From assembly GCF_964204865.1 (NCBI RefSeq), contig NC_135264.1, positions 15,128,001 through 15,192,000 of the forward strand: 64,000 nt of DNA, written 5' to 3'. The notes beneath the pieces are model-generated. The model was not told where the DNA came from and did no database searches. It saw only the letters and a program-made list of their open reading frames with translations. This DNA comes from Styela clava. Lineage: Eukaryota. Positions 40,801 to 61,800 of the stretch are shown in pieces (positions within the stretch are counted from its first letter, which is position 1; the number at the start of each line of letters is the position of its first letter). The position numbers and the translations under genes are program-made.

Positions 40801-43800
40801 CGTAAGTCAACTTAATTTGTGAGTACTCCTGTTGTGTGTGTACCAGGTTGGGGTTAGGGCATAATTTCATCCCAATTTTCCTTATTTTAGTTCTATTACA
40901 AATTCGGGGACTAGCCAAGTGACTTCCGTAGTATTTTTTGGACCTGAAATTATGGCCTAACCCTAACCTGGTACACATACTACGTTCCGGTGTCCGTCAA
41001 CTAGGTTCACATACTTCGGAAGTACCAAAATACGGGTTCACTGACTACCGCAACGTTCCAAAAACGATGTGAGATAATCCACTCACTTCAAGTTAATATA
41101 AAAACAATATATACCAAACATGGCTCAATACGACCCGCTGGCCAAATCCGGCCCGCTAGGTATTCAATCTGGCCCGCCTGATGCTGCCACAACCAAACTG
41201 AAACCAACTTTTGAAGTTTTAGTTAAAAATAGCTAAAGGAATTTGTTGATATTGCGGTTAAATTAAGTTTAGCTACGAAGTTTACTGATTTCCACAGTTG
41301 TATTTGTAACACTGTAAACATTGTTCATATAATGCAACTCGTTACGTCATACTTACATGGCCCGCCAGTTTTGATGGGCAAAATTTTTGGCTCACATTCT
41401 AAGACCGTGCCCACTCCTGATATATACTCTAACATTCTTAATTCATGATCACAGTTATCGATGGAACTGGCGACCATTCGGAGGAAATTCAGATGGAAGA
41501 CGAGAACCAAAAAAAATGTCGGTTCCCTTACAAGTAGGAAAGGACGGGATTGCTATGTTCAAGATCACAGCCGATGCGAGCGACTTCCAACGAGTAAACT
41601 TCCAGGTGGGTTTAAATTTATAAGTCTCCTCTAATTTGGCAACTCAAATACTTCTATTGGGCGTAGCATAACAATTTTTGTACATGTAAATCCTAACCCC
41701 CACCTGACTATTCCATCCAAAATGACGTCACTACGACGTCACAATCACGTCATAGAGAAGACCCACATGACAAGACTAGACTGAGTAATATCAGAAAGGA
41801 AAATGCTATTATATAGACTTTAACGCATATTTGCACCATCAAAGTCAGACGAATCGTTACAGAAAGATATTCGTGTTGTGTGCAGCAAGATCTTTGACTC
41901 ACTTAGGATAGTTATATCCAATCTTGCTACAACACTCTTGCATTATATCCATACAGATCCACCGGCACAAAAGCATAAAAGAAGGATAAATAGAAAATGT
42001 CTCATAATAACCCAATCGATACAATTACATCGTTTTATTAATTTGCATATCTCGATTTGAAAAAAATATTTGATTTTATTCTGAGATCATCAGGTTATCA
42101 AAAATGCCCAGCCATACTTCCAACTATTTATTTCTGAGAGGCTATAAATGGTGTCATTTCTAGGACTGGGTGTTTTCGAATATGTGATGATTTCAGAATC
42201 GAATCGAATATTTTTTTCGACTCGAACACTTGTGAGATTTAAAATTGTATAAAATTTTCTTATTGTATTAGATCCTGCGGAAACATAAATTACTGAAAAC
42301 ATAGAATACATCACTCAGGCAGATTGCTGAGCGTTCACACACAATAAAAAAAAAACTTATTCATAAAAAATCACTACAGAAAAGAGTCATATATCAGAAT
42401 TGCGTTGAAAAAATATGGCTTTAATAGAAAAAAATTTAGAAATTTACCTCGACCATTGGCGGAAAGAAAAATCAAGATGGTGGCGATTCGAAATTTTGCT
42501 CTGAACCAATTCGAATAATTTACTAATCGATTCGATTTGAATATTCGATTCTAAATGCCCAGTTCACACAACAAACTTTGCCTTCAGGTCAAAATCCTCT
42601 CTTACCCAAACAAAGACGAATACTGGACAAGTTGGGGAGCGGAACCGTTCAAATCGCCGTCAAATACATTCATCCAAGTTTCTACTGATGATACTACATT
42701 GACCGTAGGCGACAAAGCCAGCTTGACTATTTACACCACAGAAGAGGCGGACAGTTATAGATTTACGGTAAGAATAGTTTATAACTTAATTGCTCTAGAA
42801 TTGAGTGTTTCTCAACGTTTTTTCTTTCTTTTACCGCTTTTGTTTTACAAAAATTATTTTGTTGCGTTCCCGTTATTTCACAACAATTTTTCGGTTTTAT
42901 TTCAAGCCATGGGAACACTTGTATTTTGCGCATGTGAACATTTAAATGCTTACGTTTAATGATGAAACATTTATCTATTGTTATAACAGATCCTAGCCAG
43001 AGGAAAACTGCTCAAGCAAGAGCTTTACACTCCAGCAGAATACGTGAAAGAAACCGACAGTTTTAAATTCAGTTACATGTTTGACGTCACCAAAGATATG
43101 TCACCAAATGTTTACGTCATTGTATCATTCATTCGTTCCGACGGTGAAATTGTTGCTGACAGCGTGAAAATTACAGTCCAAGCTACTCTCGAAAACAAGG
43201 TAGGTATAGGCTAAAGTGGGATAGACTCGAGTTACTTTTTCTCTAGCTCTTTAGCGTTTTAGTGGTCGCCCGTAGTGAACTTGCTACGAGCGAATATACT
43301 CAAAAAAACTGTTCAAAAGAAATGACCTGACTCGAACTAAAATACCCACCAGAGAGACTCGATTTCAGCAAAAAAACTCTCGGCCCGACGTACAACTTGC
43401 GTTGCGTTACTAACAATTGAAAAGGTTTTTCTAAATTGTAAAAGAACATAAGGACAAGGTCCTACCTCAAAAAAATGAATTTAACCGTTAATTTTTATAC
43501 GACGATTATACGCATTTCGTTCTGAAAAAGACTCTACACAGCCAACTTTACGTTTCGGCATTGCACACTCAATTTCTCACATGCAGATTTTGAGAATAGT
43601 GTCCCCGTTCTTCAAGACAGATGACCAAGCCAAGCACTGACAGTCTCAAAATACTAATATTTCTAATTTTTAATTCAGGTTACCATGACAACAAGTACTG
43701 CTAAAACCGACGCAGGGATGCCAGTTAGTATTACAGTTAACGCAGCAGCAGGATCTTTCGTAGGTCTGAGAGCAATTGATCAAAGTGTTTTACTGCTCAA

Positions 43801-46800
43801 ATCTGGCAACGATATCACCAAAGACAAGGTAAGAAACTTTTATCTTCTACATGGGGGTGTTTCAGCACCTTGATAAGGTTCTGTACAAAAGAGAAGGAAC
43901 CTAATAAGTGGTGGGATTCAAATTTTTTGTCAGCCGGTTCCTTCACAAAAGTTATATTTTTCAGCCGGTTCTGTTAAAAACAGAACATTGACAGTAACTA
44001 GTAATGCTAACCGGTTCGCTGATCTCATAAAAATCAGTGAGACCGTTTCATAGATCCGTTGCGAACTGACTGAATCCCATCACTGGACCTAATCCAGACC
44101 CAATGTAACCCCAGATCCACAAATATACAAACTTGTTCTATCTTTTTAGATTTTCCAAGACTTGGATAAATATGGAGCTTCAAGCGGTTCCATTGGCTGG
44201 GGCGGCGGATGGGGCAGATGGTGGTGGCCATACCCCATAGGAGGTGCTGATGTTAGTGAAGTATTTGATGTAAGTATCTCCCTACGACTAATCAATCATT
44301 TTTTATGTGGCGCTCATTTGGACCTCTCGCTCCGACCAAGGCCTGGGCAAAAACAGTCTTCCAATTCTCCATTTAAAACTACATTCGTATAATTAGAAAT
44401 TTATGAAAAATGTTTTAGACATGAACCCACACAAAAGTAGGAGAACAGATATCAAAAAACACGTTCCGTCAGTAATAAAATTCCATGCGCTTAGAATATC
44501 AAAATTTGCGCGTTCATCTGTGTGGTATTCTCTTCCAGTTACGAAACTCAATTGAAACAAACAGATTTCTTAGTAATCTTCATTCTCTATTACTTAATCT
44601 TTGTAGTCATAGTCAAGTTTATTTTTTTCCAACCAGCAAAATAATAAATATTCTTCAGTTAAAATACTTGTGTTACCATTTACAATTGTCAACTTTTACG
44701 TAAAATATCACCACTTCATTTTTGTATAAGCTTTGTATAATGGTTTTGAGCCCTAAAAAAACAGTGCACTAAAATCAGTTTTCAAAGTTGCCAGAACCGT
44801 GTCCGACTCCATGGGAGTGCAGTGTCAGTATTGGTGTGAGACATTATTTTCATCTATCTAAATTGCTGTTTTCTTTTATTCCAGAACTCCGGAATCCTTG
44901 TTCTTACCGATGCTCTCGTCTATTCAAGCAAGCCGGACTGTGAGTTTGGTTTATTATTTTTTTGCCTTTGCAGTCAAATTCATTCGCCACAAATTACACT
45001 TTCGCGCCAAAACGGGTACACGAACTTCTAAATTCGGGCCTCGAAAAATTGTTTTTAAAGGGAAGAATTATTATATATTTGGTTTTATCGAAAAATTTCT
45101 TGACATAGAATTATTTGAAAATTTCAACTATTGTATGTAAAAGTTCCGCATTAGGGAATCGCCCTAGACATTCAAACACATGCGAAAATGTCTCTTTTTA
45201 TTCAAAATTTCAATTTCCTAAAATCGAATTTGACTGCGAAGGCGGCTTCTTGCATCAAATAATAATATCAGTTAGTGTACTCCATAAGAGACTGGTACAA
45301 ACGTGTTTGGAGTTATTTGTCTGATATTATAGTTTGGTGCAAAAAAAATGTGTTTATCCTTCGTCATGGCCCCTCACAATAGCGTGACTTGGCGGAGGAT
45401 AATCTGTGCAATTTTAGCGAAGTTAGACGAGGTTAAGTCAAATGTTTCAGCTTTAGTTTAAGTGTTAGTGTTCTGTACTAATGTTTTGGAGTTTGAGATT
45501 GGTTAAATCTGTCTCCTATTTACGAGACATTGAAAAACGAACTAAATTTAACAATTCAACCCGACCCGACTATGGGGTAAAAGAATAGATTCCTGCATTA
45601 GTTTCAATCCGTAATAGCAAAATTTTGGCTGTAGAATCTATTTATAAGTTTCTGTCAGAAATTTCAATCTCATGTCTTGAAGTCTGGTTTAAAATTTGTA
45701 AATATAACAAATTTGAAGCTGCGAACCTATTACCAGTAAAGATCGCTAAATTTAGACTTCATAGCTCTGTATTTCCTTACCATCAGATCGAACTTATGCT
45801 CTTACAAGTATAGTCAGTTATTGAATGTACAGACTAGTTCAGATATGTTGGATAAAAGTGCTACCAGGAACTTAAATCACAAACTTTTAATGCAATGATA
45901 CAAATGTAACCATTTTAGTTAGTATGTATAATCTGGTACGTTTACGTCATGATACTAACACTTATAACACACGATCAGATGATTTTGGTTGTCCGTTTTG
46001 TGGAGGCGGAATTGGATTCGGTGGCGGAGCAGGGGGAGGTAGACCAATCAGACTCATGTCTTTTTCTGCCAAACCTGCTCCCTTGAGACGCCAGATGGCG
46101 CAATCGTCTTCCGTGCCAAAAACGAGGAGCTACTTTCCAGAAAGTTGGATCTGGGCTAAAGAAGAGATAGGGTTAGGAAAAAATTACGGTTGGAATAACG
46201 AGAATGCAAAGAAGTTTATTAACCACAGAGTGTTTAATAAAGCATGGTTATTGAAAACTCGTCACGATAACGTCACAAATTTGTTACGTCATCAGATAAC
46301 CGAATACCACAAATTAATTTCCATAACTAATAAGGTGTGAATCAAAAGTTCGACACATCAGCTTCTTTGAAGCATAATTGACGTCATAACCCTGGTGACG
46401 TCATACAAATATTTCACAGATTCTGGTAGCTTTTTTCGACCGTTTCGGCCTCTTGGAGCGAGAAATTTGGTAATGGCCATGCCGAGAGCCCTGATGGGGT
46501 TTGCGAAACCCGCGCCAATGGCACGGCAGTATTCGAAGGCAAAGAGTTCCGCGCCAAAGACCCGCAGTTATTTTCCTGAGTCCTGGATATGGGCAGATGA
46601 ATATATAGGGTTAGAGACTGGTGTTTTAGATATTGGTCATTGGGAATGCAATTTTCGTGGTTTGAGGTGCTCTGAATCATGAAAACTAATGAAAATCATA
46701 TTTGCATCTTGATAATTCGCACGTATTGGAAGTTGTTAGTTAAATTTTCAAAGCATTTCCAATTATTCAACACTATTTAATTTAAAATGAAGACCCTAGC

Positions 46801-49800
46801 AGAAATATACATATATAAAACCTGATAAATTAATTTCTGAAAAGGCTCAGAACCTTGCCTTAGAAAACTTATAAATATTATGTTATGGAATTCCGATTTT
46901 ATCAGGGAATAGAGGGATACTTCGGAGAATTGCTGGTGAACCCATCGCGGAGGATAGAGGAGGTGCAAAAGCATGGGCCTTATTTTACACCAGAAAATTG
47001 AAAGCTGAAATTGCGGCGCAAAAACTCCGAAGTTATTTCCCAGAAACTTGGATATGGAGTCAGAGTTATATAGGGTTAGAAAGTCATATCTCAAATGCAT
47101 TGCTTGAATTTTTAAACTAAAAATCTTAGGAGATGTTTGTGCCATAGCTTTGCTTGCTACATTGCAAAAATCTGGCCCATGCATGTCGCCACCGTCTTGT
47201 ACATAAATATCCAAGTCTCGAAAGAATTACTCCAAAAATAAATCTACGATATACCGACAAAACTCTAATGTCATTATCGCCAAGCATCCAATCTTGACAC
47301 TTTGAATTAATTAGTATGGTAAATGCAGATATGCAGAGTTTGCAAACAGCCCGATAACATTTAAAATTGAAAACACATAAATTCACCTAAACGAAAAATA
47401 TCCGTACCGGCGAACGGAAACAGCCGCCCAATCTTAAACGTTGAGCTGGCTCGATATTTCGTAAGTTCTATACTTAGGTTTTTCTTTTACCTCTCAATGC
47501 ATTCCATATATTTGAGTTAGTTTTGTTCGATGAACTAAGTGAAAAAAACTACAAAGATGTAAATTGTGAATCTCCCCTTCTCCAATCGGACGATATTTCT
47601 CATTTCGATGTTTCGATCCGTCAATCATCTCAAATCTCAAGAATGTTCACTCTTTGCACGAGGATAGCTCACCCTTTAATAATTAAATCACCGGCCATTT
47701 TGCCTTCAAAACATATTACTATCCGACCCCAAAGTCATGTTACAAGACTAATGATATTTGGATCGGCAGTGGAGAGTATATGTTATTCATTTTAGCGATT
47801 TGGCCAAAAGAAGAAACTATTTGTATAGAAATCGAAGGAGAAAAAGTGTGCCATACTTTTGCCTTACCACAACCCATAATGTTATCGGCATCAGCACCGG
47901 CAACAGCTGTACTGAGATCACCAGAAGGAACAAATAATGTCAAAGTCACAAGATTTTTTTTCCCTGAATCATGGATCTGGACGGATAGTATTTCAGGGTA
48001 CGGGCTCTCAAAAGTTGCCTCCGCCTCTTCAAAAAGCGTTGAAATACCACGCTCTGTCCTGCTTTGTCGGATCATATATGTTTCACAACTATATGATAAA
48101 AATGTGGCATGAGTTATGTTGGAAGTTCGTCGTAAGTTTGACACAAACAACTGGTCGACTTGCCTCATACCTGTCTGATAACTGGACAAGGAAACATGCT
48201 TCTTCGTATATTTAAGTCGTCTTATCTGTTTTCCTCCATCCCCCAACTCACCCCCTGATAAATATACAGAATAATACTTTTGCAGACAAATGTTCACAAC
48301 TCACTAAAATGAGAATCAGTACATTGTCGGCTGGCTCGTCGTTAAAATCATCGAATTGTTAGTTGCCAGAATAATCGCATTTTAAAGAAAAGCACCAATG
48401 CTGCTATTTTACACTTGGTTGATTTTCGATTTTGCGTAAACCACGCCTTATTCAATGAAGTATACTTGCAATTCGACTCACTGGTACTGGTAGACAAGAC
48501 ATCCGACCGAAAACGTCATCTTACATTTGTACTACATCTACCAGTTGGAACTATAGTCTACTCCATCTGATTCGATATTATTCTAACGATTGAAACAACC
48601 CAACAAAGAAGCGAATGGCGGTTAAGAATTGGGATGCGAGTATTCTGACCTGTCATGCGCCAGTGCTGATAATTCTTAGATGTATAATTTATTTCGAAAA
48701 CTCCATGATGTAAACTAATTCAAATGCAGAATTCTGGAAAGCGAGAAAAACCTAGTTAAACGAGACTTAGGCCAGAAATAAACAAACAAAAACTCGCGAA
48801 CGTCTTGATAGTTGAAAACTCCATAATGTAAACTAATTTAAATGGAGAATTCTGGAAAGCGAGAAAAACCTAGTTAAACGAGACTTAGGCCAGAAATAAA
48901 CCACCAAAAAGCCGCGAACGTCTTGATAGTAGACGCCCAATATAGCAGTTATATTACATGCCTTCAATATGAAGTTAGATGACAGGTAGAGCAAATAGCT
49001 TTTGGAAACTTCATTACGGTATCGCTTCCGAACTCGAACTGTTTAGCTGCGACGCGACACTTGCGATACCCCATATCACTGTATAGTATTTGTTTTGAGG
49101 GGTTAGTGACACCTAGAGTTAGAATATACTATATATTCTTTATTCGAGAGACGACGCATGAGCGATAGCATTTCAGTTTACTGTATATGTTGACTTGCAT
49201 CACTTCTCAAATAATCTTTACTTCAGTCATTCAACCGATATTTTCGTGTCGTCGTAAACGAGGACTCCTACGAAATAAGAGATGTGCTATGTTCGATCGA
49301 AAAGATATGCTTAGACCAGCAGCGCCAGGAATGGCTGCTAACTCCGGGCTGCGATTCAAGGGAGATTCGAAACAAACATCGAAAGCTAGAACGAATTTTC
49401 CCGAGTCCTGGATCTGGACGGATAGTACCTTAGGGTACGGTTTGAGCTAAAATAGATGAATGTTACACAAGCTGGTATTATAGGTGAACCCCGCATGTTT
49501 TCAAACTCATACTTCAATACCCAGCCATGGTATGTGTGATGAACTGGATAAGCTTTACGGTCTTTCCAAAAACATAACAGCTCTCTCTTTCCGGTCTGAA
49601 GCCTACATCGGAACATGGTGGGGAAATTCTCAAATCGTGTTTGCACGAGATTTTTTACAGAAACACTTCACGCACACACGACCAGGCACTGCATTCACTC
49701 CACACAGCAATTGATTTTTTTCAAATAAACAAATTGGTTACGTATTTGCTAGTTAGACGTTGAGTACACTTGCTACTCTCTGTTAAAGATTCTTTCCGTG

Positions 49801-52800
49801 TGCGTAAGAACTGCGAATATCTTGGTTTTGCAATGAAAGATTAGCATTGTTTCGCCGCTGCGTCTGAAACGCTGAGCTGGTACGCTATTTTGGTAATTTT
49901 CACTCTATTTTATTGTTTCAATCTTACATTATCTTCGAATTAGTTTTACCCAGCTAACTAAGTATAAAACGCTGAAGAATCTTTAACTTTGAGACGACAG
50001 CCTACTTTAATCGAATGATATTTCCAATTTTTCAAAAACTATCACTAGGGGGGGACACAGGGTGCCGCATGACTGAAGACGGATTTGAAGTCTGCGCAAT
50101 GATGATGATGCGAGGTATACAGGATGAAACGTTTATCATGAACTCTCCCCCGAAAACAAGATCTTTTTTCCCTGAGACTTGGATTTGGACCGAAGATAAA
50201 ATAGGGTTAGATCTAAATACTGCATGAAATGATTCATCATCTAACTATACTCGCCTACTTTACTTACTTGCTTGATTTAATCATTAACATTCTTCTTGTA
50301 CTTTGTGACATATGCTTCAAACAACATAAACGTAAAAGTTATTTCGAGTAATCTAAAAAAAAACACAAAACATATCAACAACTCACACACATGGACGCTG
50401 CGACACTTGAGATATCATATTTCGACAAAGTATTTATTGTGACATCACGCATTGTTATGACGTCATGTTGTACTCCTCCACGAGAAAATTTAGATACGAT
50501 AGTACAGGGTTAGGTTAGTAATATAGACATACCTGTACATTATTAGTAACATTCCGATCTTTTTTATCGCTCCAGAAGTGTGTGTACTAATATGGAGGTA
50601 ACTAATTTTGTTCGCCTATTTTTTATCCATTTGTGTAAAGGGACTGAAACATATGATCTGAAACATACAAAGCAGTGGCCTCTTTTCAGAATTTTGTATG
50701 GCGTGAAGACATGAAATATAGTTATGGAAGTTATAGTAACAATATTTCCAAATTTTTGATTTTAAGTTTTTGATCCATGCCCGCGGTGCATGCGACCATT
50801 TTTTGGCGTTCAACGTATCGTTGGCGGTCCTGCTGATGGGAACATTCGTCACAGAGTCTCTTCAGGAATAACTCCTGCAAAAGCTACATCCACTAAAACG
50901 ACGAGGAGTTATTTCCCAGAGTCGTGGATATGGGCGGATGAATATATCGGGTTAGAAACGCTTGCTTGTGGCTTCTATCGTGTGATAGAATCATCTTATG
51001 AACTTGCATGTGTATCTCTGCTTTGTCGTAAATGAATCATAAAATTTACTTTAAGTCTGATTTTGATTATTTTATATAATCTACTCTTTCTCAGCAAAAT
51101 CACGATTGCAAATTTAAACTTTCAAGTCATAGTGATTTCGTAACAGAAATGACAAATTTGAAGAAAATTACTATGCACAATAAACATAAAATTTTCATAA
51201 AATCTGATTTCGATTATTCTACTCTTTCACAGCAAAATCGCGATTGCAAATTGAAATGTACATAATGTAATAAACAATAAACCGTAATAATCATTTCTCA
51301 CATAAAATGGCGAATGCCAATAAAAAAACAAAACATCCTAAACCAGTTCTCAAACTTTCATTATCTGTGGACCCTTTTCAAAGACTCCCAACACCAGTGG
51401 TTGTTGCTTAGTTTGACAAACACCCAAATTATTTTTTGGGTTAGTTAGGTATAGGGGGCAACATTAACAGAAACTGGCCCCGGGCACCAGGAAAGTTTGA
51501 CACGTCACTGTCCAACAATTGTATAGATCTGCTCTTATTAAATGCCAATTTTTGTTTTAATAAGTTTCTATTCGTTATTTTATGCACAGTTTTGCAGACA
51601 GCACTAGTTTTTGAAATGTATTGTTATTGTGTAAGGGTATCATCATATAGATCAGTGTCTCTCAGCATTTATCTCTTGTGTCCCATCTGTAGCGTTAAAA
51701 AACCATAAGCCGGTACATGCAATTGCTGAACAGGCAATTGCTGTTGCTATTTTCGATGCATTTTTTTTTCAAATACTACGCTGACATTGTTTCTTAAAGC
51801 AAAACGCTCTTAGGTTTCCATCAACGTAGTTTATACGGAATCATTTTTCATATATCTATATGTACGTAGTCAGTGTAGTCAGAGACCATACGTCATCTCA
51901 TGGCACATCTTGTCCTGTTATGGTATATCATGTCACATTTTATTGTGACATCACGTTTTGGTATGACTTCATGTTGTACTTACTCACGAAGGGATTTAGG
52001 TACGCTATTGCAGGATTTGGTTAGTAATATAGGCATAAAAGTTTATTATTAGTAACCTTCAGATAAAAAAATTCGCAAAACAGTAGCTTTTTACAGAGCA
52101 GTAGCCGCTTTCACAGAATTTTGTTAGAAGTGAAGACAGGAGAAATGTCGTATAAGTAGTTTCGTAAGAATAATTTGAAATTTTGCTTCAAGTTTTTGAT
52201 CGATGTCCGCAGTGTATTCGTGTAAGAATCTTTGGCGGTGCTGCTAATGGGAACATTCGTCACAGAGTCTCTTCAGGAATAGTTCCTGCAAAAGCTACAT
52301 CCACTAAAACGACGAGGTGTTATTTCCCAGAGTCGTGGATTTGGGCGGATAAATATATCGGGTTAGAAACGCTTGCTTGTGGCTTCTATCGTGTGATAGA
52401 ATCATCTTATGAACTTGCATGTGTATCTCGGCTTTGTCGCAAACGAATCATAAAATTACTTTAAGTCTGATTTTGATTATTTTATATAATCTACTCTTTC
52501 ACCGCAAAATCAGGATTGCAAATTTAAACTTTCAAGTCATAGTGATTTCGTAACAAAAAAGACAAATTTGAAAAAAATCACCACGCACAATAAACAGGAA
52601 ATTTTTATAAAGTATGTGTTCCATTATTCTGCTCTTTCACAGCAAAATCACGATTGCAAACTAAATGCATATAATATATTAAAACCTGAAACAGAAATAA
52701 TCATTTTTCAGCGAAATATCGCAAATACCAACAAAAACAAAAGGGTACTCCTGAAGAAAGTATGCGCACCAAGATGTCGCGTAACCTGAAACTCAACCTG

Positions 52801-55800
52801 GTACACAACCCGAGTTCAGGTTGTGCGCCATCTTGGTGCGCATACCTCAGGAGGTCCAAAAGAAGACTTTCTAAATCTGTTTTCAAACTTTCCTGATTGG
52901 GGACCCCTTTTAAAGACTTTCAAACACTTGTATACATCTGCGCCAAGTTTCGTTTTGATAAGTTTCCATTCGTTATTTTATGCACAGTTTTGCAAAAATC
53001 TCTAGTTTTTGAAATGTATTGTTAATATGTAAAGCTATAAGTTTATAGTCATGTAAACCAATGGTTCTCAGTCTTTTAACTCTTGTGGCTCATCACTGTA
53101 TAAAGAACCTTAGGCCGACACAATGCACGTTGAGGAACACCGCTGTAAACGGTGTGGCAGCCTTTAGATTGTCAGTATTTGTACGCGTATTTTCTCGGTT
53201 AGTTTTTTAGGTGGGAGGATCATTGATAGCAAGCCAGGGAAAGTTAGTTTTCAGTAAATCGTTCAAGAATAGTGTAAAATGGAGTTGGAAAAAACGTAAG
53301 AATTTATGTCTCACTACCAATGCCACAAAACGTTTTCTGTTTTTAGTCTTTGGATCTAGCCCTTGTTGCATGAGAAGACAATTTATGCGTCGGCGACCCG
53401 GTAATGCCCGTATTGTGGGTGGAAACGATATGAATAGAAACGCTCCTCCCGCCGCAAAAGTGGGGACTTCTACCAAAACAAGAAGTTTCTTTCCCGAATC
53501 GTGGATTTGAGCGAATGAATACATGGGGTTAGGATTCTCGATGGTTGTTAGTTGTCTGCTTCTGGCTTGTCTATGCTTGTACTATTACGACAAGCAGTAA
53601 TGCTGCATGCGTTTTTTTTTCGAACAACTCAAGTTGTTTTCACATTGTAGAATATAAAATAAATACAAAAAAAACAGGAATAAAACATAATGAAACAATG
53701 TTAAATTCACTGTTATGTAAAACGTAATAAATAAGTCATAAGGTGACCCACGAAAAAATTGTTACCATGTCATTGCGGAACACATTATAGGGCAAGAGTG
53801 GAAAATTGCTTTTCTAAAGGGGCCACGCAAATATAATATACTTGGGAGGCTACTGGGAAGACGTTCAAAAATCGATATGAAGCTGTGAAGCTGTAAAAAA
53901 CATTTTTTTTGCAAATAACTGGACTCGATAATAATCGCATGTCTGCTCATTTCACTGATGTAATACAATAGGTTTTAGTTAAAATTTATAGCCATAAAAA
54001 CAGTAGTAGTAATTTAGTCGGGCACAAGAGGGCAGGATGAAACCCTTCGGTGGGCCGGATTTGGCCCGCGGGCCCCAATTTGACCATCCTTGTTTTAAAA
54101 AGAACATAACTTGTTTTTACATTTAACTATCTTCATTACGAGTCTTGTGTGCATAGAATAAACATACTGAGTTAATATATGATTCAATATATAGTCAATA
54201 TGATGCCTAAGTTTAATATAAATCTTACCTAGAAAAAGCGCGAAGCGAACTGCGACTGCATGAGTTGAGGTGGCCTAAATGCCAGGCAGGTACCTTAGTT
54301 TTAGATCAAAATAGTAAACTTGCGTTAAGGAAGTACACATGCATAAAATTCAGACAGGAAAGAAATCACTATAGGGCGTAGAACGAGAATTGTATTAGTG
54401 AAATTTGTACTTTTTTGCAATGGGTTACTTATTATTTCAAAGTTCCAATGCATCCATGGATGCTTTTCCGCCTCGGAGGCCCTGGACCAGAATCGGCAAT
54501 GGCGATGGCGGGACAGCCTGGTATGGCGGGACAGCCTGGTATGGCGGGACAGCCTGCGCCACCACCTTCCCAACCTGGACAACCTGGAGGGTCTCAGCCA
54601 ACTAAAGCTCGGAGCTACTTCCCAGAATCTTGGATTTGGACAGAGGAGCTTGTGGGGTTAGGAATTATTTTAAACATAATTGTCTTGCAACCTGGCATGT
54701 TTTAAAAATCATCATTTTATTTTTGTTCTGTGATTAGCTAAAAGTTTTATAAAATGCCACGCCTACTTTTTGAAACGCTCAACTAACCAAATTATTGCCT
54801 AACGCATTACGCAATCGGTGCTGGTGACGTAATATTACTAAATAAATCAAAAAAGGAACATGTTGTTTTGAGTCCGATTCATCAGAGAAATCGTTCTTAA
54901 AATGTTGAATCTCTTCACCGCATGTATTACATTACTGAAGAACATTTATAATTGCGATATATAATATTTAGAAATACGTGATTTGGTGGAGACTAGAAAC
55001 TTCGTTTTCGGGCCTTGTTTGAACACATTGCTTCTTTTCGAAAAATTTCATAACATTAATTAACAAACGAAGGATATATTTCACATTGTGTAACACATAG
55101 TAATCAGCGGAAAACCCCGTGCTTTAGGCACAATGTACAGACTTCTTATGATTGAACGTAGCGTTTCTTATTATTATATGCTCACGAATCTGATATCACA
55201 AAAATAGGAAATCTCTAATATGTGATGAGTCCATATATATGCCTCAAAGTAAAGAGGTAGTCTTGAGGATAGTCTTGAATACATTATAAAATATAATTGG
55301 TCCACTCAAACACAGCACATCCGGTCCATATTAACTTTAAACAGAATTTGCATGTTTTTTTTTCATTTGCGAGCAATCAAAAATCATACGTTAATAACTC
55401 ATGCCGATTTCGTTTATTTTTTATTTTTTGCTCATGGGACAAAAATACTTGACACTATTAAAAATGATCAGAAACTTTATCTAAATTACACAAAAATTCG
55501 AATATCAGAATACAATAGAGATCATTTAGAAGGTAACAAACACGTCTTAAATTCGTCTTACCAAGTAAGGCGGCTTATTTACGGGCATCGGTAATATTTT
55601 GTGTTTGACGGTAAACTAATCAAATGATTGAATATTATATATGTAATCTTATACGCAGAGTATGGTATATGTTACAAAAACAAACTGAGTTAGTTTTGAG
55701 CAAATAGGAATCTGTAACGTAAATATCAAATAACCAGAAAAAAATCATCAAAATTAGCGTATAAATTAGTTACAAACAGTAATACAGACTGAGAGTCAGA

Positions 55801-58800
55801 TGTAGAGTCTTTATATTGTTTATTTTGTTTCCTCGTTGTATAGGAATCGTTGTTTTGTAGTAACTAGTTTTTGTCTTTTTTTTATAATTTTGTTAGGTTG
55901 AGCCAAGTTAGTGAGTGATGAATAAAATTTCGCGCGCTCATATTGTTTACTCATGAATGAGTGTGTGTCAATTAGCTTGGGATAAATTCTGGTAGAGCAA
56001 CCAAAGATTATTCTGTTATGCTCTTATATTCAGCTTTTTACAGTACGATACGGTAGTATCTATATTCGAAATGTAATCATAAAGATATTTACGTATTTAT
56101 TTAATTAGATGCGAGCCGGTACGTTCAAAATATGTACAACCTTCGTAGTCGTGAGGCTTAAACTCAATACTCTATATCGCTATCTCGTGGTCAGAAAAAT
56201 ATCAGATTTTAAAATATTCTAATCTCTGACGACCTTTTCACATCTTTTCAAAGTTGGAGAATTCTATTATTACGACGGTCCAGTAGGATTGGCAGGTGTA
56301 AATTTCAGAGGGATGGCGGAGGTCGATTTTGAAATGCTTGCAGATTATTCGATGGACTTTGACATGGACGACGCTGATGGATTTGCAGGGAGTTCCCAGC
56401 AATTAGGCTCCAAAACAAGGAGTTATTTTCCAGAATCTTGGATTTGGACTGACAGTAAAACGGGGTTTGTGATCTGTGTTATTAATCAGCAAAATCGCCC
56501 GACATGCGAATGGGTGGTGTCATTGAAATAGAAATCACTGAATATTTTGGGATGTCAGAAACATGTTGTTCTATAATTTTAACATTTGGTTTGTTTATTT
56601 TGGCAAGTTGTAAATGAAGTATGCAAAAAATACTGGTAGATTCCTAAAAATGGGGTTGACTTGTTCTATTAATCTCCATACCGACATGCTGAGACCTCTG
56701 TACCACATAATAACACTCTTTTTTGACTAATTGGTGAATTAATTGATTGAAGATCACATCAAATCTTCAGTTATGATTAACCATTGAATTAACTGAAAAA
56801 TTCGATACTAATTTACCTCAAATACCACTAAGGTTGTGAATCCCAAAACAAGAACACACATGTCGTGTAGGATTACATACGCATTCTGGCATTTGTATAG
56901 AATCATTTAACAGCAGAAAAGATCACAATGTTTCGAAAGTTGAATTTGAACTCCCGTATGCGCGATCTACTTGTCGGCGGTTTGTTTTTTGGGCGTTCTT
57001 GGAATTTCATGATAGTCAGCGAACTCGTTTCTAGACCCATGACCTACATTGATTTCTCGTTGTTAGCGAGTCCTACACAAAAGAGAACCTGTTACAAGAT
57101 TTTTGAATCCCAGCACTGGTGGACTATTTGTTGATCGACAATTAGAATATATAACATAATTTCCTCATTTTGGTCTCTGACTTCATTTATTATGGTAATC
57201 TGATATATATCTGATATGGCCAAATCCTGCCAGTTCGGTAATTCAATCTGGCCCGCTCGATACTGCCGCAACCAAACTGAAAACAGATTTTGATATTTGA
57301 GCTAAAAATAGCTCAAGAATTTTATTGAGATTTCGATTAAATTTAGTTTTGTCACGAGGCTTATTGTTTTCCACTTTTCTTTTTGTAACGCTGTAACTAT
57401 TTTTCATAAAATGTATCTTTTACATCACACTCACATGGCCCGCCAGTCTTGGTGGGCAAAATTTTTGGCCCTTGATCCAAAAACTTTGCCTACCCCTGCC
57501 TATATCCATGCTCATAGTATCATATCAACAGATTATCGATCAAGGCCAAACAATACGTCCCTTTGCACGTAAATTCAGAATTGGAACCTCGCGTTCGCCC
57601 TCCTTTTTGTACAGACTAGAGATAGAAAACAGCTGAAGGTTTAGCTTAGAGAAAGATCTAGTTCTGTCCAGAATTGCAAAAATTGTACAGGTTACCACAG
57701 CACCACAGCTTTATCTAAATTTGAAAAGGAAAAGTTTATTATCTTTACCAAACTAGAAAACACACTACACGCACACATACATATGTATACAAAGTTTTCA
57801 GTAAAAAACTGAGTAAGCAACGTTTCAGGGTTATCGTAGTCTGTTATCATAACGTCTGTTTCCGACATTGAATTAATAAATTTGCCCCCTTGCAAGGATA
57901 ATTATTTATTATCATTTATCAATTTATTTGAAGACCCCTTTGGCGGATTGGAAGGAAACGGTTTTCACTTTTTCCCTTCGGTTCCCATGGCTCTTGCGAG
58001 GACGGAATCCAGAATCGTTGGATCCAATAAGCAGTCCGGAGCTTCAAAAACTCGAAGCTATTTTCCGGAGTCATGGATATGGACTGATGACCATACAGGG
58101 TTAGCTTGAAATTCGAAATACATTCTTCGCATGCAATGTGTGCTTTATATTATCGTGCATGTGCCGACTTATTTTGCACGATCCGCCTCAAAGGCCTATC
58201 GTGTCCACTAGCGCATACACCAATGCTCATCCTTTTTCTTAAATGTTGCTATGACTTACTTTGTATATCACAATTTGTAATTTGGCGTAGAATGTCGATA
58301 TTATGACTTCACACTTTTGGTATGTGACGTCCCTCTTTGGTATTATGATATCACAGTTTTGTTTTATGATGTCACGTTTTGTGATATGACGTCACGCTTT
58401 GAGTGTTCTACTTTTTGTCAGAATGTAAAAGTTATCCCAATTATTTGCTCAATGCATTTATTCTATGATTTAGTATAATACAGTATAGGTTCAGTTATAC
58501 TGGGGGAAATTATTTACCGTATATCATTACCGGTAATTATACAGGGTGTCTAAAAATTCGCCTGATTTTATAGTAATAACAATTGTAAGTTTAAATAAAT
58601 TTTATTGTATGATAAAAGAGAATTACAAGCACAATAAGAACTATTAATAAAAACATCATTTGTGTCGTGCCGACACAAATGCTAATATATCCGAAATGTG
58701 CATTTTTGCTCTGAAACGTTCATATGGATGTAAAATAGAATAGTATTTGAATCGTGACGGACGGAGAGTCACAGCCGTGCATAAATTGTTTTGAAAATAG

Positions 58801-61800
58801 TTGTATTTTGGAAACTGAGAAAAAGAAAAGATATTTGATGTATGTTTACTTCAGTAGTCAGCACTGGGGGGGAATTAGTAATGCCCATCGTAATAGTCAG
58901 GCTTATGACTTTGATAATGTTTTATGCAGCTGGCATCTTTACAGATTAGTTACAGATTAGCTTGAAAACCAACAACTAAAATTACGATCTCGCTAAATCT
59001 TTCTTGTGTTTAATAATATTTCTCTCTAGGGGGCCATGGTCGACCAATGCCAATGATGATGGCTATGAACGCTGCGCCTATGCTTAGGTCGGCAGTGCCG
59101 GTAATGAAAGGAGCCTTTCGGCAATCGTCGACTAAAGTTCGAAAGTACTTTCCTGAAACATGGATATGGGCTGAAAAGAGTTTAGGGTTTGTTTGTAGAA
59201 AAAACATGAATAGACAAATGGTCTGGTCTGGTTTAGCACGATTTTGACCTTCACATCAAATAACAGCAACGACACTGTGCTTTTGCGTAATGGTCATGCT
59301 TCAATGAATTTTAATAATAGTTGTGTAACCTAAATATAATTCAGGTTGTGAGACAAGTTGCATTCTTTTGCATGAATAGAAAAGTTTGTATCTGGGCACA
59401 AAAACAGGCTGCAAGACCTTAAATGCAATTTTACTTTTAAATCTTTTCAGGGAGACATGGACCAATAATGTTTAAAACATTGGAGTTTGCACGAATGATG
59501 TTAGGAAGTTCCTTTACCAAATCTGCACAAAGTATTGTTAAAGTTCGGAAATATTTCCCAGAAACTTGGATCTGGACAAATGACACCATAGGGTTGGTTC
59601 GAGGGTGTAGTGTGATCATGAATCATGTAATACCATTATTATTAGGGGCGTCCACCACAGATATTTCAAGGGGGGAGGTGCAAATCTGCAAATGACTTAC
59701 TTCTTTTGGGTTGGTCAGCTGGACGCCCATGGTTTGAACATCCTTAACCCAATAATCCTTATCATCCTAACTTGTCATGTTAGTGTAAATTTATCCCTGA
59801 TTACATTGAATGGTTTGGAATGTAATAAACTCATGATGGGGTTGGACCAAAAAACACGAGGGCATGCATAACGATTTTGAGTTTCAAATAATCCTATTTG
59901 CCAGTTGGTTCCGTGCTCGAGAATGCAACTTGTCAATTATCTGGACAGTAGTTGAACTAGGTGATTGCAGTTAGCTATGTACTGTGTGCAGCTGTAGTTT
60001 TGTTTTGTAGTATCATTAGAGAAATCATATCATTTGAACTTTTCCATACTCAATAATTTCATCCTCATTCATTCATTTCTGTAGTTGTATGTTAACATGT
60101 CTGATTGTAGAGTTTGTCATTACTGTATTAACATAGAAAATGTGACTTTCATCTTTCCATGTTGAAAGAAATGTACTGAGTAGTTTTTCTTTGTTTGTGA
60201 AATGCTGCCTACAATTTCAAGTTATGGTTCGAAATTAGTACAGCAGAAAAGTGTTGACGAAAAGATGAAAAGGGTAAATTGTAGTCATGCAATTTTAGAA
60301 GGTTAATATGTGTGAGTGACTGTTTTTAAAATGTTTCTTTGAGGAGAAGACATATTGTAGACTTGGCTACTAAAATTGATGTTCTTGTTTTTATTGTAAA
60401 GTTAGTGTTATATCGATCAGTTATTAAGAACCTTACTGGTAGAAAAATTTGTATGAAACATTGCTATAATGGAGTTGAGTGTTCATGTTCTCCAAACTAA
60501 AGTGGATTTGGGCATAGCAAGTTGGGCATGTCTAGAGCATAGCTTAGCCGAAATTGAATCGCATTATTTACAGATGTACACACCATGTACAGCGAGTACA
60601 GGTGTTTAAAGTGAAGTGTTCTTTTTTTTAAAGTCAACTACTTCTGGCTTGAAGAAGACGCGCAACATGTAATGTTTGCCATGGCGACAGATGATGGAGC
60701 TCCAGTCAATAAAGTATTAGTAGATCAAGGCTCAGCGTCTACCCCTTCAGTAACAAGAAGTTTTTTTCCTGAATCTTGGATTTGGACAGATAGTCAGATA
60801 GGGTGGGAATATGTGTGAAGTGTGTTATACTTTTCAAAGTTTGTCTTGTGTGTTTTGACAGTCTTCCGAACCCCACGAGTCTTTGAGTCTTGTTTCATCA
60901 TTTTTGTGATGTTACCTGGCAATTAGATATACCTCCAGTTTCCTAACCTACTGTCTACATGTCAAATCAGCAGCAGAAAAGGTCCTTCAAGTGATGTTTG
61001 CGGAATTTATAAACATTTATATAAACATCACTAATTCTAAATGTAGCTGTATAAACTATGTAATGCTCTCAAATATCCAGTTTGGTATAGCAACACTTAC
61101 ATCCATAGACATAGACTCACTAAATTCATTTTTACATTTCGTTTTAAAAAGCAATTCCATATACTTACATCTACATAAATATGATCTCAAACATTCTATT
61201 TGCTCAGGTATTTTCAGAGATTATCGCTTTCGTGTGTCACCAACTAAGGCTTAAAGTACTTGCAACCTTTTTTACAGCCATACATTCATAACAACCCTGT
61301 CTATAATATATACGCCTTAAACATTTTAAAGACAATTTTTTCTTACTAGTTAATTTAACTACTTAAATTAAATACTTGTGATCCTGCTAATAATAAAATA
61401 GCTCGGAAAAAGCTCACAATGCGATCCAAGTGTTATATTAACCTTACAGATACACAGATTTCACTGTTCAAGCAATAACCTTCGACTCTCATATTTCTCC
61501 TTCGTCATCCTTCTACTATGAAAAGCATTGGTTTAATAACGTTCGCCTAGCTTACACAATAAGTTGCGCTTACATGTTACTTACTGCAAATCTGCGCTAA
61601 ATACTACAAATCTGCGCTAAATACTGCAAATCTGCGCTAAATACTGCAAATCTGCGCTAAATACTGCAAATCTGCGCTAAATATCGCTGCTTCAAGCTCG
61701 CATATATCTTCTTCTTCCTTGTAGCTAGGCTGTAAATGAACAAAACCCTCTATCTTTGTCAGAAAAACATCTATTACTCGTTACATTCATTCCACAATTC

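What the first reader, a model, noticed from the sequence alone, without database searches (positions are those of the whole stretch)
45979..60802. Array of 15 mutually exclusive bait-region exons in an A2M/CD109/TEP gene (Dscam-like immune diversification)
Seen in sequence: 15 tandem exons of 142-214 nt sit between constitutive exons 44885-44939 (ends in phase 1) and 62938-63055 (starts in phase 2). All are AG..GT bounded and 3n+1 long, with a largely unrelated 5' part and the same R-x-x-FPE(S/T)WIW-x4-G|gt end. Including none or two shifts the frame, so only single-cassette mRNAs encode full-length protein. They start after residue 686. Established: the protease bait region of A2M-family proteins lies at about this position, just before the FPETWIW motif, and Drosophila Tep2 uses a handful of alternative exons there. 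Inference: one gene makes 14-15 protease traps or opsonins with different trigger specificities. This is larger than the arrays I know of in this family, and gene predictors would likely miss it. Exons 3 and 15 are not even in the ORF track.
Basis: partly seen in the sequence, partly recalled or inferred. Interest (0 to 1): 0.95.

Follow-up and report, generated by a model that had tools for sequence, protein, structure and literature searches.

The report
Alternative bait exons in sea-squirt macroglobulin
One secreted thioester (alpha-2-macroglobulin/CD109-like) gene of the sea squirt Styela clava carries 15 tandem copies of its protease-bait exon, and only one copy can be used per mRNA. The array is real and large, but this kind of array is already known from snails, scallops and flies, and public annotation already has eight of the isoforms.

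Summary
**Observation: confirmed exactly.**
- Window 45979-60802 holds 15 tandem cassettes. All are bounded AG...GG|GT and all are 3n+1 long.
- Each has an unalignable 5' part and an invariant R-x-x-FPE(S/T)WIW tail.
- 14 are open; cassette 9 has a TGA inside WIW.
- They lie between exon 16 (44885-44939) and exon 18 (62938-63055) of a 37-exon, 1830-aa gene.

**The protein.** It is a secreted Styela clava protein with MG2, MG3, bait-region, A2M, thioester (GCGEQ) and receptor-binding domains, plus a C-terminal ConA/LamG-like domain.

**Interpretation: partly supported.**
- RefSeq already lists isoforms X2-X8 in two annotation releases. Each has exactly one cassette (1, 2, 5, 6, 7, 11, 12 or 15).
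- Skipping, double and triple inclusion all run into early stops.
- Cassettes 3, 4, 8, 10, 13 and 14 are unannotated. They keep frame, splice sites and tail residues while synonymous sites are saturated.
- No RNA reads could be examined.
- No Dscam-type docking/selector pairing was found. Instead the cassettes have weak splice sites and GCATG within 120 nt downstream (10/15, against 0/35 constitutive exons).

**Novelty.** The kind is known: Biomphalaria BgTEP2 has 12 exons, Chlamys TEP 6, Drosophila Tep2 5. RefSeq isoforms of Ciona and Clavelina, and of the mollusc abalone, show the same design. This is a new, large chordate member, not a new mechanism.

The parts
31816..44269 (+). Coding exons 1-15 of the gene: signal peptide, MG domains and the A2M bait-region domain. 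The gene continues past the window end to window coordinate 78451.
   Evidence: Exact spliced mapping of RefSeq protein P0058; Pfam.
44885..44939 (+). Constitutive exon 16, 55 nt, ends in phase 1. Strong donor ACT|GTGAGT.
45979..46171 (+). Cassette 1, 193 nt. Gly-rich, with CxxC. Used in RefSeq isoform X4.
46420..46609 (+). Cassette 2, 190 nt. Used in RefSeq isoform X5.
46906..47074 (+). Cassette 3, 169 nt. Open, with no transcript model; acceptor predicted.
47796..47997 (+). Cassette 4, 202 nt. Open, two Cys, no transcript model; acceptor predicted.
49227..49434 (+). Cassette 5, 208 nt. Has RRKR between two Cys. Used in RefSeq isoform X3.
50001..50205 (+). Cassette 6. RefSeq isoform X8 uses the acceptor at 50049 (157 nt); 50001 would give 205 nt. 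Its closest relative is the single intact cassette of the neighbouring paralogue.
50767..50950 (+). Cassette 7, 184 nt. Has CxxC and Q-R-IVGG. Used in RefSeq isoform X6.
52193..52361 (+). Cassette 8, 169 nt. A recent duplicate of cassette 7 (1.41-kb unit, 90% identical exon). Has three Cys and no transcript model.
53347..53527 (+). Cassette 9, 181 nt. Pseudo-exon: TGA at 53508-53510 replaces the second Trp of WIW. Has A-R-IVGG.
54443..54656 (+). Cassette 10, 214 nt. Collagen-like GQPGMAGQPGMAGQP. No transcript model seen.
56254..56464 (+). Cassette 11, 211 nt. Acidic. Used in RefSeq isoform X2.
57934..58099 (+). Cassette 12, 166 nt. Has S-R-IVGS. Used in isoform X6 of the older RefSeq release.
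59030..59186 (+). Cassette 13, 157 nt. Met-rich. No transcript model.
59451..59592 (+). Cassette 14, 142 nt. No transcript model.
60634..60802 (+). Cassette 15, 169 nt. Used in RefSeq isoform X7.
60803..62937 (+). Last intron of the array, 2135 nt, with six TGCATG copies at 61809-62341.
62938..63055 (+). Constitutive exon 18, 118 nt, starts in phase 2. Encodes (G)DDGSTTFTYNTPDTITTWEL...
63689..63802 (+). Constitutive exon 19. Exons 20-37 lie beyond the window and carry the thioester domain with GCGEQ, the receptor-binding domain and the LamG/ConA-like domain.

Best explanation
The window holds the 5' half of a Styela clava gene for a secreted thioester protein of the alpha-2-macroglobulin/CD109/TEP superfamily.

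**What is shown.** The single exon that encodes the protease-sensitive bait (hypervariable) segment, plus the start of the next macroglobulin domain, has been duplicated into 15 tandem cassettes. Each mRNA model takes exactly one cassette between exon 16 and exon 18. At least eight cassettes are used this way.

**What is inferred.**
- The other six open cassettes are probably used too, at lower level or in other conditions. Cassette 9 is dead.
- Exclusivity is enforced at least by reading frame. Every cassette is 3n+1 long, so zero, two or three cassettes give an early stop, and such mRNAs would be removed by nonsense-mediated decay.
- Choice among cassettes most likely rests on uniformly weak cassette splice sites that need help from intronic enhancers. 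(U)GCAUG downstream of most cassettes suggests an Rbfox-type factor. A Dscam-type RNA docking site is unlikely.
- The protein products share scaffold and thioester but differ in the about 30-55 residues that a protease must cut to trigger the trap. The gene would therefore yield up to 14 protease traps or opsonins with different trigger specificities.
For: **Structure.** 15 cassettes, all 3n+1, with an invariant tail.

**Annotation.**
- P0058 maps exactly and gives the flanking exons and phases.
- 14 RefSeq proteins (XP_077965464-71 with gaps, and XP_039257840-46) each hold one cassette: c1, c2, c5, c6, c7, c11, c12 or c15. Seven of my eight predicted acceptors match theirs.

**Frame.**
- Skipping gives a stop 51 codons on.
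- Double inclusion gives a stop a median of 9 codons into the second cassette.
- 0 of 455 triple combinations reach the normal stop.

**Selection.**
- In the 10 tail codons, synonymous sites are saturated (pS about 1) while pN is 0.10. The figures are the same for the unannotated cassettes.
- Every open cassette except c8 has 0 or 2 Cys.

**Position.** The segment lies between Pfam A2M_BRD and A2M. Homology to CD109, A2ML1, A2M and TEP1 structures resumes at residues 731-735.

**Protein features.** GCGEQ at residue 969, an N-terminal signal peptide, and no C-terminal hydrophobic stretch.

**Splice signals.**
- Donor +3 is T in 12/15 cassettes against 4/35 constitutive exons.
- AAG acceptors occur in 6/15 cassettes against 0/35.
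- GCATG lies within +120 nt of 10/15 cassettes against 0/35 constitutive exons. Background is 5-7% and the binomial P is about 4e-8.

**Relatives.**
- Ciona intestinalis has 3 cassettes in its isoforms.
- Clavelina lepadiformis has two genes with 4 each.
- Contigs of 5.5-5.8 kb from JGI and Logan give proteins that differ only in this segment.

**Precedent.** BgTEP2 has 12 mutually exclusive exons with a conserved C-terminal part (PMC7016707).
Against: - No RNA reads or junction counts were seen here. RefSeq isoforms are models. That the NCBI pipeline builds alternative variants only from transcript alignments is my knowledge, not a test made here.
- Six open cassettes have no model in either release, and isoform X1 was not retrievable.
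- Cassette 8 has an odd Cys count, including a Ser-to-Cys change in the conserved tail.
- The search for short transcript-derived fragments with cassette 4 found no candidates at all, not even for annotated cassettes that share six words with it. It is therefore uninformative.
- The Rbfox idea rests on motif enrichment only. A six-frame search for the Fox-1_C domain in the genome found nothing, and the controls did not ring either, so that says nothing.
- Protease-bait function is inferred from position and from motifs (R-IVGG, RRKR, collagen-like). It was not tested.
Confidence: 0.78

Rival explanations
1. Only the eight or nine annotated cassettes are ever spliced in. The other intact-looking ones (3, 4, 8, 10, 13, 14) are unused relics of exon duplication, like cassette 9.
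For: - None of these six appears in either RefSeq release.
- Cassette 9 shows that decay does happen.
- Cassette 8 has three Cys and lost the RIVGG of its twin.
- The neighbouring paralogue keeps one intact and one frameshifted cassette.
Against: - Variable parts are unalignable, so the copies are old. Yet all six keep an open frame. The stop-codon frequency in this base composition is about 7% per codon, so about 2% of 55-codon stretches stay open by chance.
- All six keep a 3n+1 length, AG/GT sites and tail residues, with saturated synonymous sites (pN 0.10, pS about 1).
- Cassette 4 keeps an even Cys pair.
Confidence: 0.2
2. The variable segment is not a protease bait in the inhibitor sense. 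It is the hypervariable or processing region of an opsonin-type TEP, as in mosquito TEP1 or snail BgTEP. The isoforms would then differ in target recognition or activation, not in which protease they trap.
For: - The best solved relative is CD109, and TEP1 also matches well.
- The thioester GCGEQ is intact.
- The extra C-terminal ConA/LamG-like domain suggests carbohydrate or ligand binding.
- The BgTEP2 variants are discussed as recognition molecules (PMC7016707).
Against: - Cassettes carry recognisable protease substrate motifs: R-IVGG in c7 and c9 and R-IVGS in c12, RRKR in c5, and a collagen-like Gly-X-Y run in c10.
- The two readings are not exclusive, because cleavage of this segment also activates opsonin-type TEPs.
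Confidence: 0.3
3. Cassette choice works as in insect Dscam1: one docking sequence in a flanking intron pairs with a selector sequence next to each cassette, giving stochastic one-of-many choice.
For: The layout is a tandem cluster of many variants between two constitutive exons, with long flanking introns of 1039 and 2135 nt.
Against: - 12- and 14-mer reverse-complement matches between either flanking intron and the inter-cassette introns are no more frequent than in the reversed, complemented or same-strand controls. The maximum is 4 of 14 introns.
- Ungapped pairing scores that allow G-U show no docking position shared by more cassettes than in shuffled or reversed controls.
- No conserved 6-7-mer is shared upstream of the cassettes.
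Confidence: 0.05
4. Several cassettes are joined in one mRNA to make longer, combinatorial bait regions.
For: None found.
Against: All 105 pairs hit a stop a median of 9 codons (maximum 55) after the first cassette. 0 of 455 triples reach the normal stop. Every RefSeq model has one cassette.
Confidence: 0.02

Closest known systems
Biomphalaria glabrata BgTEP2 (12 mutually exclusive exons over 30 kb) and BgCD109 (8 predicted variants), Duval et al. 2020, PMC7016707
   Same: - Tandem duplicates of the exon that encodes the bait-like hypervariable region of a thioester protein.
- One exon per transcript.
- Variable length and composition, with strongly conserved residues at the C-terminal end of the exon.
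   Different: - Those are in a mollusc; this one is in a chordate (tunicate).
- 15 genomic copies here (14 open) against 12.
- BgTEP2 variants were recovered from transcriptomes. Here only eight have models and no reads were seen.
- This protein has an added C-terminal ConA/LamG-like domain.
Drosophila Tep2 (5 bait-exon variants) and Chlamys farreri CfTEP (6 mutually exclusive exons, 7 isoforms), as cited in PMC7016707. Tick and shrimp A2M bait-region splice variants: Saravanan et al. 2003, cited in PMC12939704; shrimp A2M-2, cited in PMC7016707.
   Same: Alternative splicing confined to the bait region. The proposed role is a wider range of proteases or pathogens.
   Different: Those arrays are smaller and all are in protostomes. 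CfTEP isoforms have shown sex- and pathogen-dependent expression; nothing of that kind is known here.
RefSeq isoform sets of other ascidians and of abalone: Ciona intestinalis 'alpha-2-macroglobulin homologue' X1-X3, Clavelina lepadiformis CD109-like (two genes), Haliotis rufescens and H. cracherodii CD109-like
   Same: - Isoforms differ only in the segment between ...LVY-x5 and FPETW(I/L)W-x5-G, which is the same exon at the same protein position.
- The ascidian proteins share the LamG-like C-terminal domain.
   Different: - Fewer annotated cassettes in Ciona (3) and Clavelina (4 per gene).
- Cassette variable parts show no clear one-to-one orthology with Styela: z is mostly below 5.
Human CD109 (PDB 8s3o), A2ML1 (7q1y), A2M (6tav)
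   Same: Same domain order and thioester. The variable cassette part sits where the bait region lies. The alignment resumes at A2M residue 729, just after the bait region, which I recall as 690-728 in UniProt P01023.
   Different: - Vertebrate genes have a single bait exon.
- CD109 is GPI-anchored. This protein has no C-terminal hydrophobic signal and instead carries a LamG-like domain.
Insect Dscam1 variable exon clusters
   Same: Tandem arrays of mutually exclusive exons in a gene with an immune role.
   Different: - One cluster of 15 here, against three or four clusters and thousands of combinations in Dscam1.
- No docking/selector complementarity detected.
- Frame-based exclusion applies here.

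Membership tests
A2M/TEP/complement thioester-protein superfamily | Macroglobulin domain series (MG2, MG3, bait-region domain, A2M domain) and receptor-binding domain | tested here: met
   Pfam hits over curated cut-offs: MG2, MG3, A2M_BRD 477-618, A2M 742-833, A2M_recep 1370-1456.
A2M/TEP/complement thioester-protein superfamily | Thioester domain with the CGEQ motif | tested here: met
   TED_complement at 946-1256, E = 6e-86. GCGEQ at residue 969.
CD109 subfamily (the name given by RefSeq) | C-terminal GPI-anchor signal (hydrophobic tail) | tested here: not met
   The only hydrophobic 19-residue window is the N-terminal signal peptide. The C-terminus is a Laminin_G_3/ConA-like domain followed by a Pro-rich tail. 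A paralogue, P0006, does end in a hydrophobic tail.
CD109 subfamily (the name given by RefSeq) | Closest sequence relatives are CD109 rather than A2M or C3 | tested here: met
   Best PDB hit is human CD109 8s3o at E = 4e-180, against A2ML1 at 1.5e-132, A2M at 4e-119 and C3 at 1e-82.
Mutually exclusive bait-exon arrays of TEP genes (Tep2, CfTEP, BgTEP2, BgCD109) | Tandem duplicated exons that encode the bait/hypervariable segment, with a variable 5' part and a conserved 3' part | tested here: met
Mutually exclusive bait-exon arrays of TEP genes (Tep2, CfTEP, BgTEP2, BgCD109) | Mature transcripts contain exactly one of the exons | tested here: inconclusive
   - Eight different single-cassette RefSeq protein models exist.
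- Frame arithmetic excludes 0, 2 or 3 cassettes.
- No reads or cDNA were examined, and six cassettes have no model.
Mutually exclusive bait-exon arrays of TEP genes (Tep2, CfTEP, BgTEP2, BgCD109) | Isoform-specific expression or function | not testable with these tools
   Needs expression data and protease assays.
Dscam-type docking/selector control | One intronic docking sequence complementary to a selector next to each variable exon | tested here: not met
   No excess over controls in k-mer or G-U-tolerant ungapped scans. Gapped duplex searches timed out, so weak or bulged pairings are not excluded.

The most novel reading that the evidence does not exclude
The bait-exon array is an ancient bilaterian device that survives in the chordate lineage only in tunicates.
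- In Styela it has grown to 14 working cassettes.
- Each cassette would mimic the cleavage site of a different protease class: the zymogen-activation site R-IVGG, the furin-type RRKR, and collagen-like Gly-X-Y.
- Choice would be set by weak splice sites plus an Rbfox-type (U)GCAUG enhancer behind each cassette, with nonsense-mediated decay as the backstop.

This would give a simple, tractable chordate model for one-of-many exon choice in innate immunity.
Probability: 0.3. Interest if true: 0.6.

Novelty: new member of a known kind. Interest (0 to 1): 0.42.

Why it matters
- It extends a known invertebrate way of diversifying thioester proteins, many alternative bait exons in one gene, to a chordate. 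The array matches or exceeds the largest one described in the literature I could search (12 in BgTEP2).
- Ciona and Clavelina isoforms indicate that the design is shared by ascidians, while vertebrate CD109 and A2M genes have one bait exon. This bears on when vertebrates replaced exon arrays with gene families.
- The locus is compact (17 kb). It has clear sequence signatures: uniform weak GG|GTTAG donors, downstream GCATG, and strict 3n+1 lengths. That makes one-of-many exon choice testable in an animal where electroporated minigenes are routine.
- It is not a new principle, and public annotation already holds eight of the isoforms.

Tried and rejected
The genomic arrays of Ciona and Clavelina could not be counted.

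**Searches that led nowhere**
- Short transcript-derived fragments: a search with cassette 4 by reference found no candidate sharing three words. Fragments of annotated cassettes would share six words, so the collection simply lacks such fragments. The blank says nothing about cassette 4.
- Isoform X1: not in the 14-member cluster, and not found with P0002 or P0058 region queries. Which cassette it uses is unknown.
- Rbfox gene: a Fox-1_C Pfam search of the genome gave nothing, and its controls did not ring either. Uninformative.
- Papers: no paper in the searchable library describes bait-exon arrays in tunicates or in Styela.

**Tests with a negative result**
- Docking/selector RNA pairing: two RNAduplex scans timed out. 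The k-mer scan and the G-U-tolerant ungapped scan showed nothing above controls.
- One-to-one orthology of cassettes with other ascidians: local alignment z-scores are mostly below 5. The exception is cassette 6 against the neighbouring paralogue, z = 10.8.
- Higher allelic divergence in cassettes than in the scaffold between the two RefSeq releases: 11/373 against 30/1765 differences. That is too few to claim.

Full-length queries were database proteins returned by the tools. Frame checks for skipped, double and triple inclusion were done locally and only stop positions were printed.

Full report
**Where we are.** The window is G000:C19:15128001-15192000, + strand, in a 377-Mb assembly. Proteins nearly or fully identical to its translation are NCBI entries of Styela clava, the leathery sea squirt, named 'CD109 antigen-like'. 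One cluster sits on a contig of 18,707,400 bases, which is the length of C19. Earlier notes of this scan also name S. clava.

**Checking the observation.**
- A six-frame scan finds 14 exact FPE[ST]WIW matches, all on the + strand between 46134 and 60785. A relaxed scan adds a 15th at 53490 that reads FPESWI*, with TGA at 53508-53510.
- Each copy ends five codons later in GG|GT. Each has an upstream in-frame AG that gives an exon of 3n+1 nt, from 142 to 214 nt.
- A nucleotide profile of the last 60 nt plus the donor finds exactly these 15 in 144 kb around the gene, plus two in the neighbouring paralogue. The next best hit has E about 1.
- Across the genome the degenerate pattern occurs 18 times: 14 here and four single copies in paralogues on C1, C17 (two) and C19. 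The reversed control pattern occurs 0 times.
- The 5' parts of the cassettes are essentially unalignable (36-59% nucleotide identity), except cassettes 7 and 8 at 90%.

**The gene.** I mapped the RefSeq protein P0058 (XP_077965467.1, isoform X4, 1830 aa) back onto the contig, requiring exact translation and GT/GC-AG introns.
- This gives 37 coding exons from window coordinate 31816 to 78451.
- Exon 16 is 44885-44939 and ends in phase 1. Exon 17 is cassette 1 (45979-46171). Exon 18 is 62938-63055 and starts in phase 2.
- 2059 nt precede the cassette, that is 686 codons plus one base.
- Pfam finds MG2, MG3, A2M_BRD (477-618), A2M (742-833, which starts at FPESWIW), TED (946-1256), A2M_recep (1370-1456) and a C-terminal Laminin_G_3/ConA-like domain (1570-1721).
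- The thioester motif GCGEQ is at residue 969. There is an N-terminal signal peptide and no C-terminal hydrophobic tail.
- Among solved structures the best match is human CD109 (8s3o, E = 4e-180), then A2ML1, A2M and mosquito TEP1.
- In all of these the alignment of the C-terminal part starts at query residue 731-735, the conserved tail of the cassette. In A2M (6tav) it starts at residue 729.
- From memory, the A2M bait region is 690-728 in precursor numbering. The variable part of each cassette therefore occupies the bait position.

**Are the cassettes used one at a time?**
- The 90%-identity cluster of P0058 has 14 members: isoforms X2-X8 of two RefSeq releases. Extracting the segment between LTDALVY and TPDTITTWEL shows that every model has exactly one cassette.

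| Release | X2 | X3 | X4 | X5 | X6 | X7 | X8 |
|---|---|---|---|---|---|---|---|
| Newer | c11 | c5 | c1 | c2 | c7 | c15 | c6 |
| Older | c11 | c1 | c2 | c7 | c12 | c15 | c6 |

- The junction residues confirm my acceptors for seven of the eight cassettes. For c6, RefSeq uses 50049 (157 nt, still 3n+1).
- X1 was not retrievable.
- To my knowledge the NCBI pipeline builds alternative variants only from transcript alignments. These models are therefore indirect RNA evidence.
- Local frame arithmetic gave these outcomes:
  - No cassette: a stop 51 codons after exon 16.
  - Any of the 105 pairs: a stop a median of 9 (maximum 55) codons after the first cassette.
  - Triples: none of 455 reaches the normal stop.
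  - A single cassette: an open frame for 14, and a stop at codon 741 for c9.

**Are the unannotated cassettes alive?** Cassettes 3, 4, 8, 10, 13 and 14 have no model.
- In the ten tail codons (R-x-x-FPExWIW), pairwise synonymous differences are saturated (pS about 1) while pN is 0.10. The values are the same when only the unannotated cassettes are compared with the rest.
- All six keep open frames, although this base composition gives about 7% stops per codon. All keep a 3n+1 length and AG/GT sites.
- Cys counts are 0 or 2 in every open cassette except c8, which has 3.
- I read this as continued selection on most of them. c8 is the weakest candidate. It is a 1.41-kb tandem duplicate of c7, and its variable part (84% identity, 10 nonsynonymous against 5 synonymous codon changes) has diverged more than the adjacent intron (92.6%).
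- A search for short transcript-derived fragments with c4 returned no candidates at all, so it is uninformative.

**How might choice work?**
- Cassette donors are uniform and suboptimal: GG|GTTAG in ten, GTACG in two, GTTTG in two, and GTTGG or GTGGG in one each.
- Position +3 is T in 12/15 cassettes against 4/35 constitutive donors. Six of 15 acceptors are AAG against 0/35.
- GCATG lies within 120 nt downstream of 10/15 cassettes against 0/35 constitutive exons. Background is 5-7% per 120-nt window, and the binomial P is about 4e-8 without c8. 17 of the window's 25 TGCATG copies lie in the array, six of them in the last intron.
- It is established for other animals that Rbfox proteins bound to (U)GCAUG downstream of an exon promote its inclusion. 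That this applies here is inference.
- Inter-cassette introns are 248-1597 nt, so steric exclusion is unlikely.
- Searches for a Dscam-type docking site gave nothing above reversed, complemented or shuffled controls. Gapped duplex searches timed out.

**Relatives and history.**
- A head-to-head paralogue lies upstream on the minus strand, at window coordinates -458 to about -24901. It has one intact cassette, most like c6 (z = 10.8), and one frameshifted copy like c15, in the same order.
- The other paralogues have one copy each.
- Isoforms of the Ciona intestinalis 'alpha-2-macroglobulin homologue' (X1-X3), of two Clavelina lepadiformis genes (four cassettes each), and proteins from 5.5-5.8-kb JGI/Logan contigs differ only in this segment.
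- Abalone CD109-like RefSeq isoforms show at least nine distinct cassettes at the same protein position.
- Variable parts show no clear orthology between ascidians.

**What is known.** Duval et al. 2020 (PMC7016707) describe the following:
- 12 mutually exclusive exons over 30 kb in BgTEP2, with conserved residues at the C-terminal end of each exon.
- Eight predicted BgCD109 variants.
- Five Drosophila Tep2 isoforms, six CfTEP exons and six shrimp A2M-2 variants, all cited there.

Tick A2M bait splice variants are cited in PMC12939704. I found no paper on tunicates.

**Verdict.** The core reading, mutually exclusive bait exons, is well supported for eight cassettes and plausible for six more. 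The comparison with Dscam and the claims of novelty are overstated. This is a large chordate member of a known kind. The two most useful additions are the splice-signal signature and the evidence that the design is shared among ascidians.

**Limits.**
- No stretch of N occurs in the window or in the 144 kb examined.

Noticed in passing
window 46172-60922 (the 120 nt after each cassette) and 61809-62341: GCATG, often as TGCATG, lies within 120 nt downstream of 10 of 15 cassettes and of 0 of 35 constitutive exons of the same gene. 17 of the window's 25 TGCATG copies lie in the array, six of them in the last intron.
   Followed up: partly
cassette donors, e.g. window 46169-46179, 46607-46617, 50203-50213: Cassette 5' splice sites are uniform and weak (GG|GTTAG in ten), and six acceptors are AAG. 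Eight donors read TAGGGT, which resembles the UAGGG core bound by hnRNP A1-type repressors. That resemblance comes from memory and was not tested.
   Followed up: partly
G000:C19:15103100-15127543 (window coordinates -24901 to -458), minus strand: A head-to-head paralogue of the gene has one intact bait cassette (like c6, at about -14234 to -14410) and one frameshifted cassette (like c15, at about -14745 to -14903). An older RefSeq model, XP_039257927, reads through the frameshifted one.
   Followed up: partly
window 50817-50835 (c7), 53410-53424 (c9), 58006-58020 (c12), 49245-49290 (c5), 54505-54560 (c10); positions approximate: Several baits look like protease substrates:
- R-IVGG (c7, c9) and R-IVGS (c12), the activation site of trypsin-like zymogens. 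It also occurs in a Clavelina cassette.
- RRKR between two Cys (c5).
- A collagen-like GQPGMAGQPGMAGQP run (c10).
   Followed up: no
window coordinates about 75119-78451 (beyond the window, exons 34-37): The protein ends in a Laminin_G_3/ConA-like domain (residues 1570-1721) instead of a GPI signal. The same addition is present in the Ciona, Phallusia and Clavelina homologues but not in the solved CD109, A2M or TEP1 chains listed.
   Followed up: partly
window 50433-53048: A tandem duplication of about 1.41 kb produced cassettes 7 and 8. The variable part of the exon (84% identity) has diverged more than the flanking intron (92.6%), with 10 nonsynonymous against 5 synonymous codon changes and a 15-nt deletion.
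   Followed up: yes
window 48696-48931: Two tandem copies of a 118-nt unit (93% identical) lie in the intron between cassettes 4 and 5.
   Followed up: no
window 45979-46171 (cassette 1): Between the two RefSeq releases, which come from different assemblies, cassette 1 differs at 6 of 65 residues. The scaffold differs at 1.7%. Other cassettes differ by 0-5%.
   Followed up: partly
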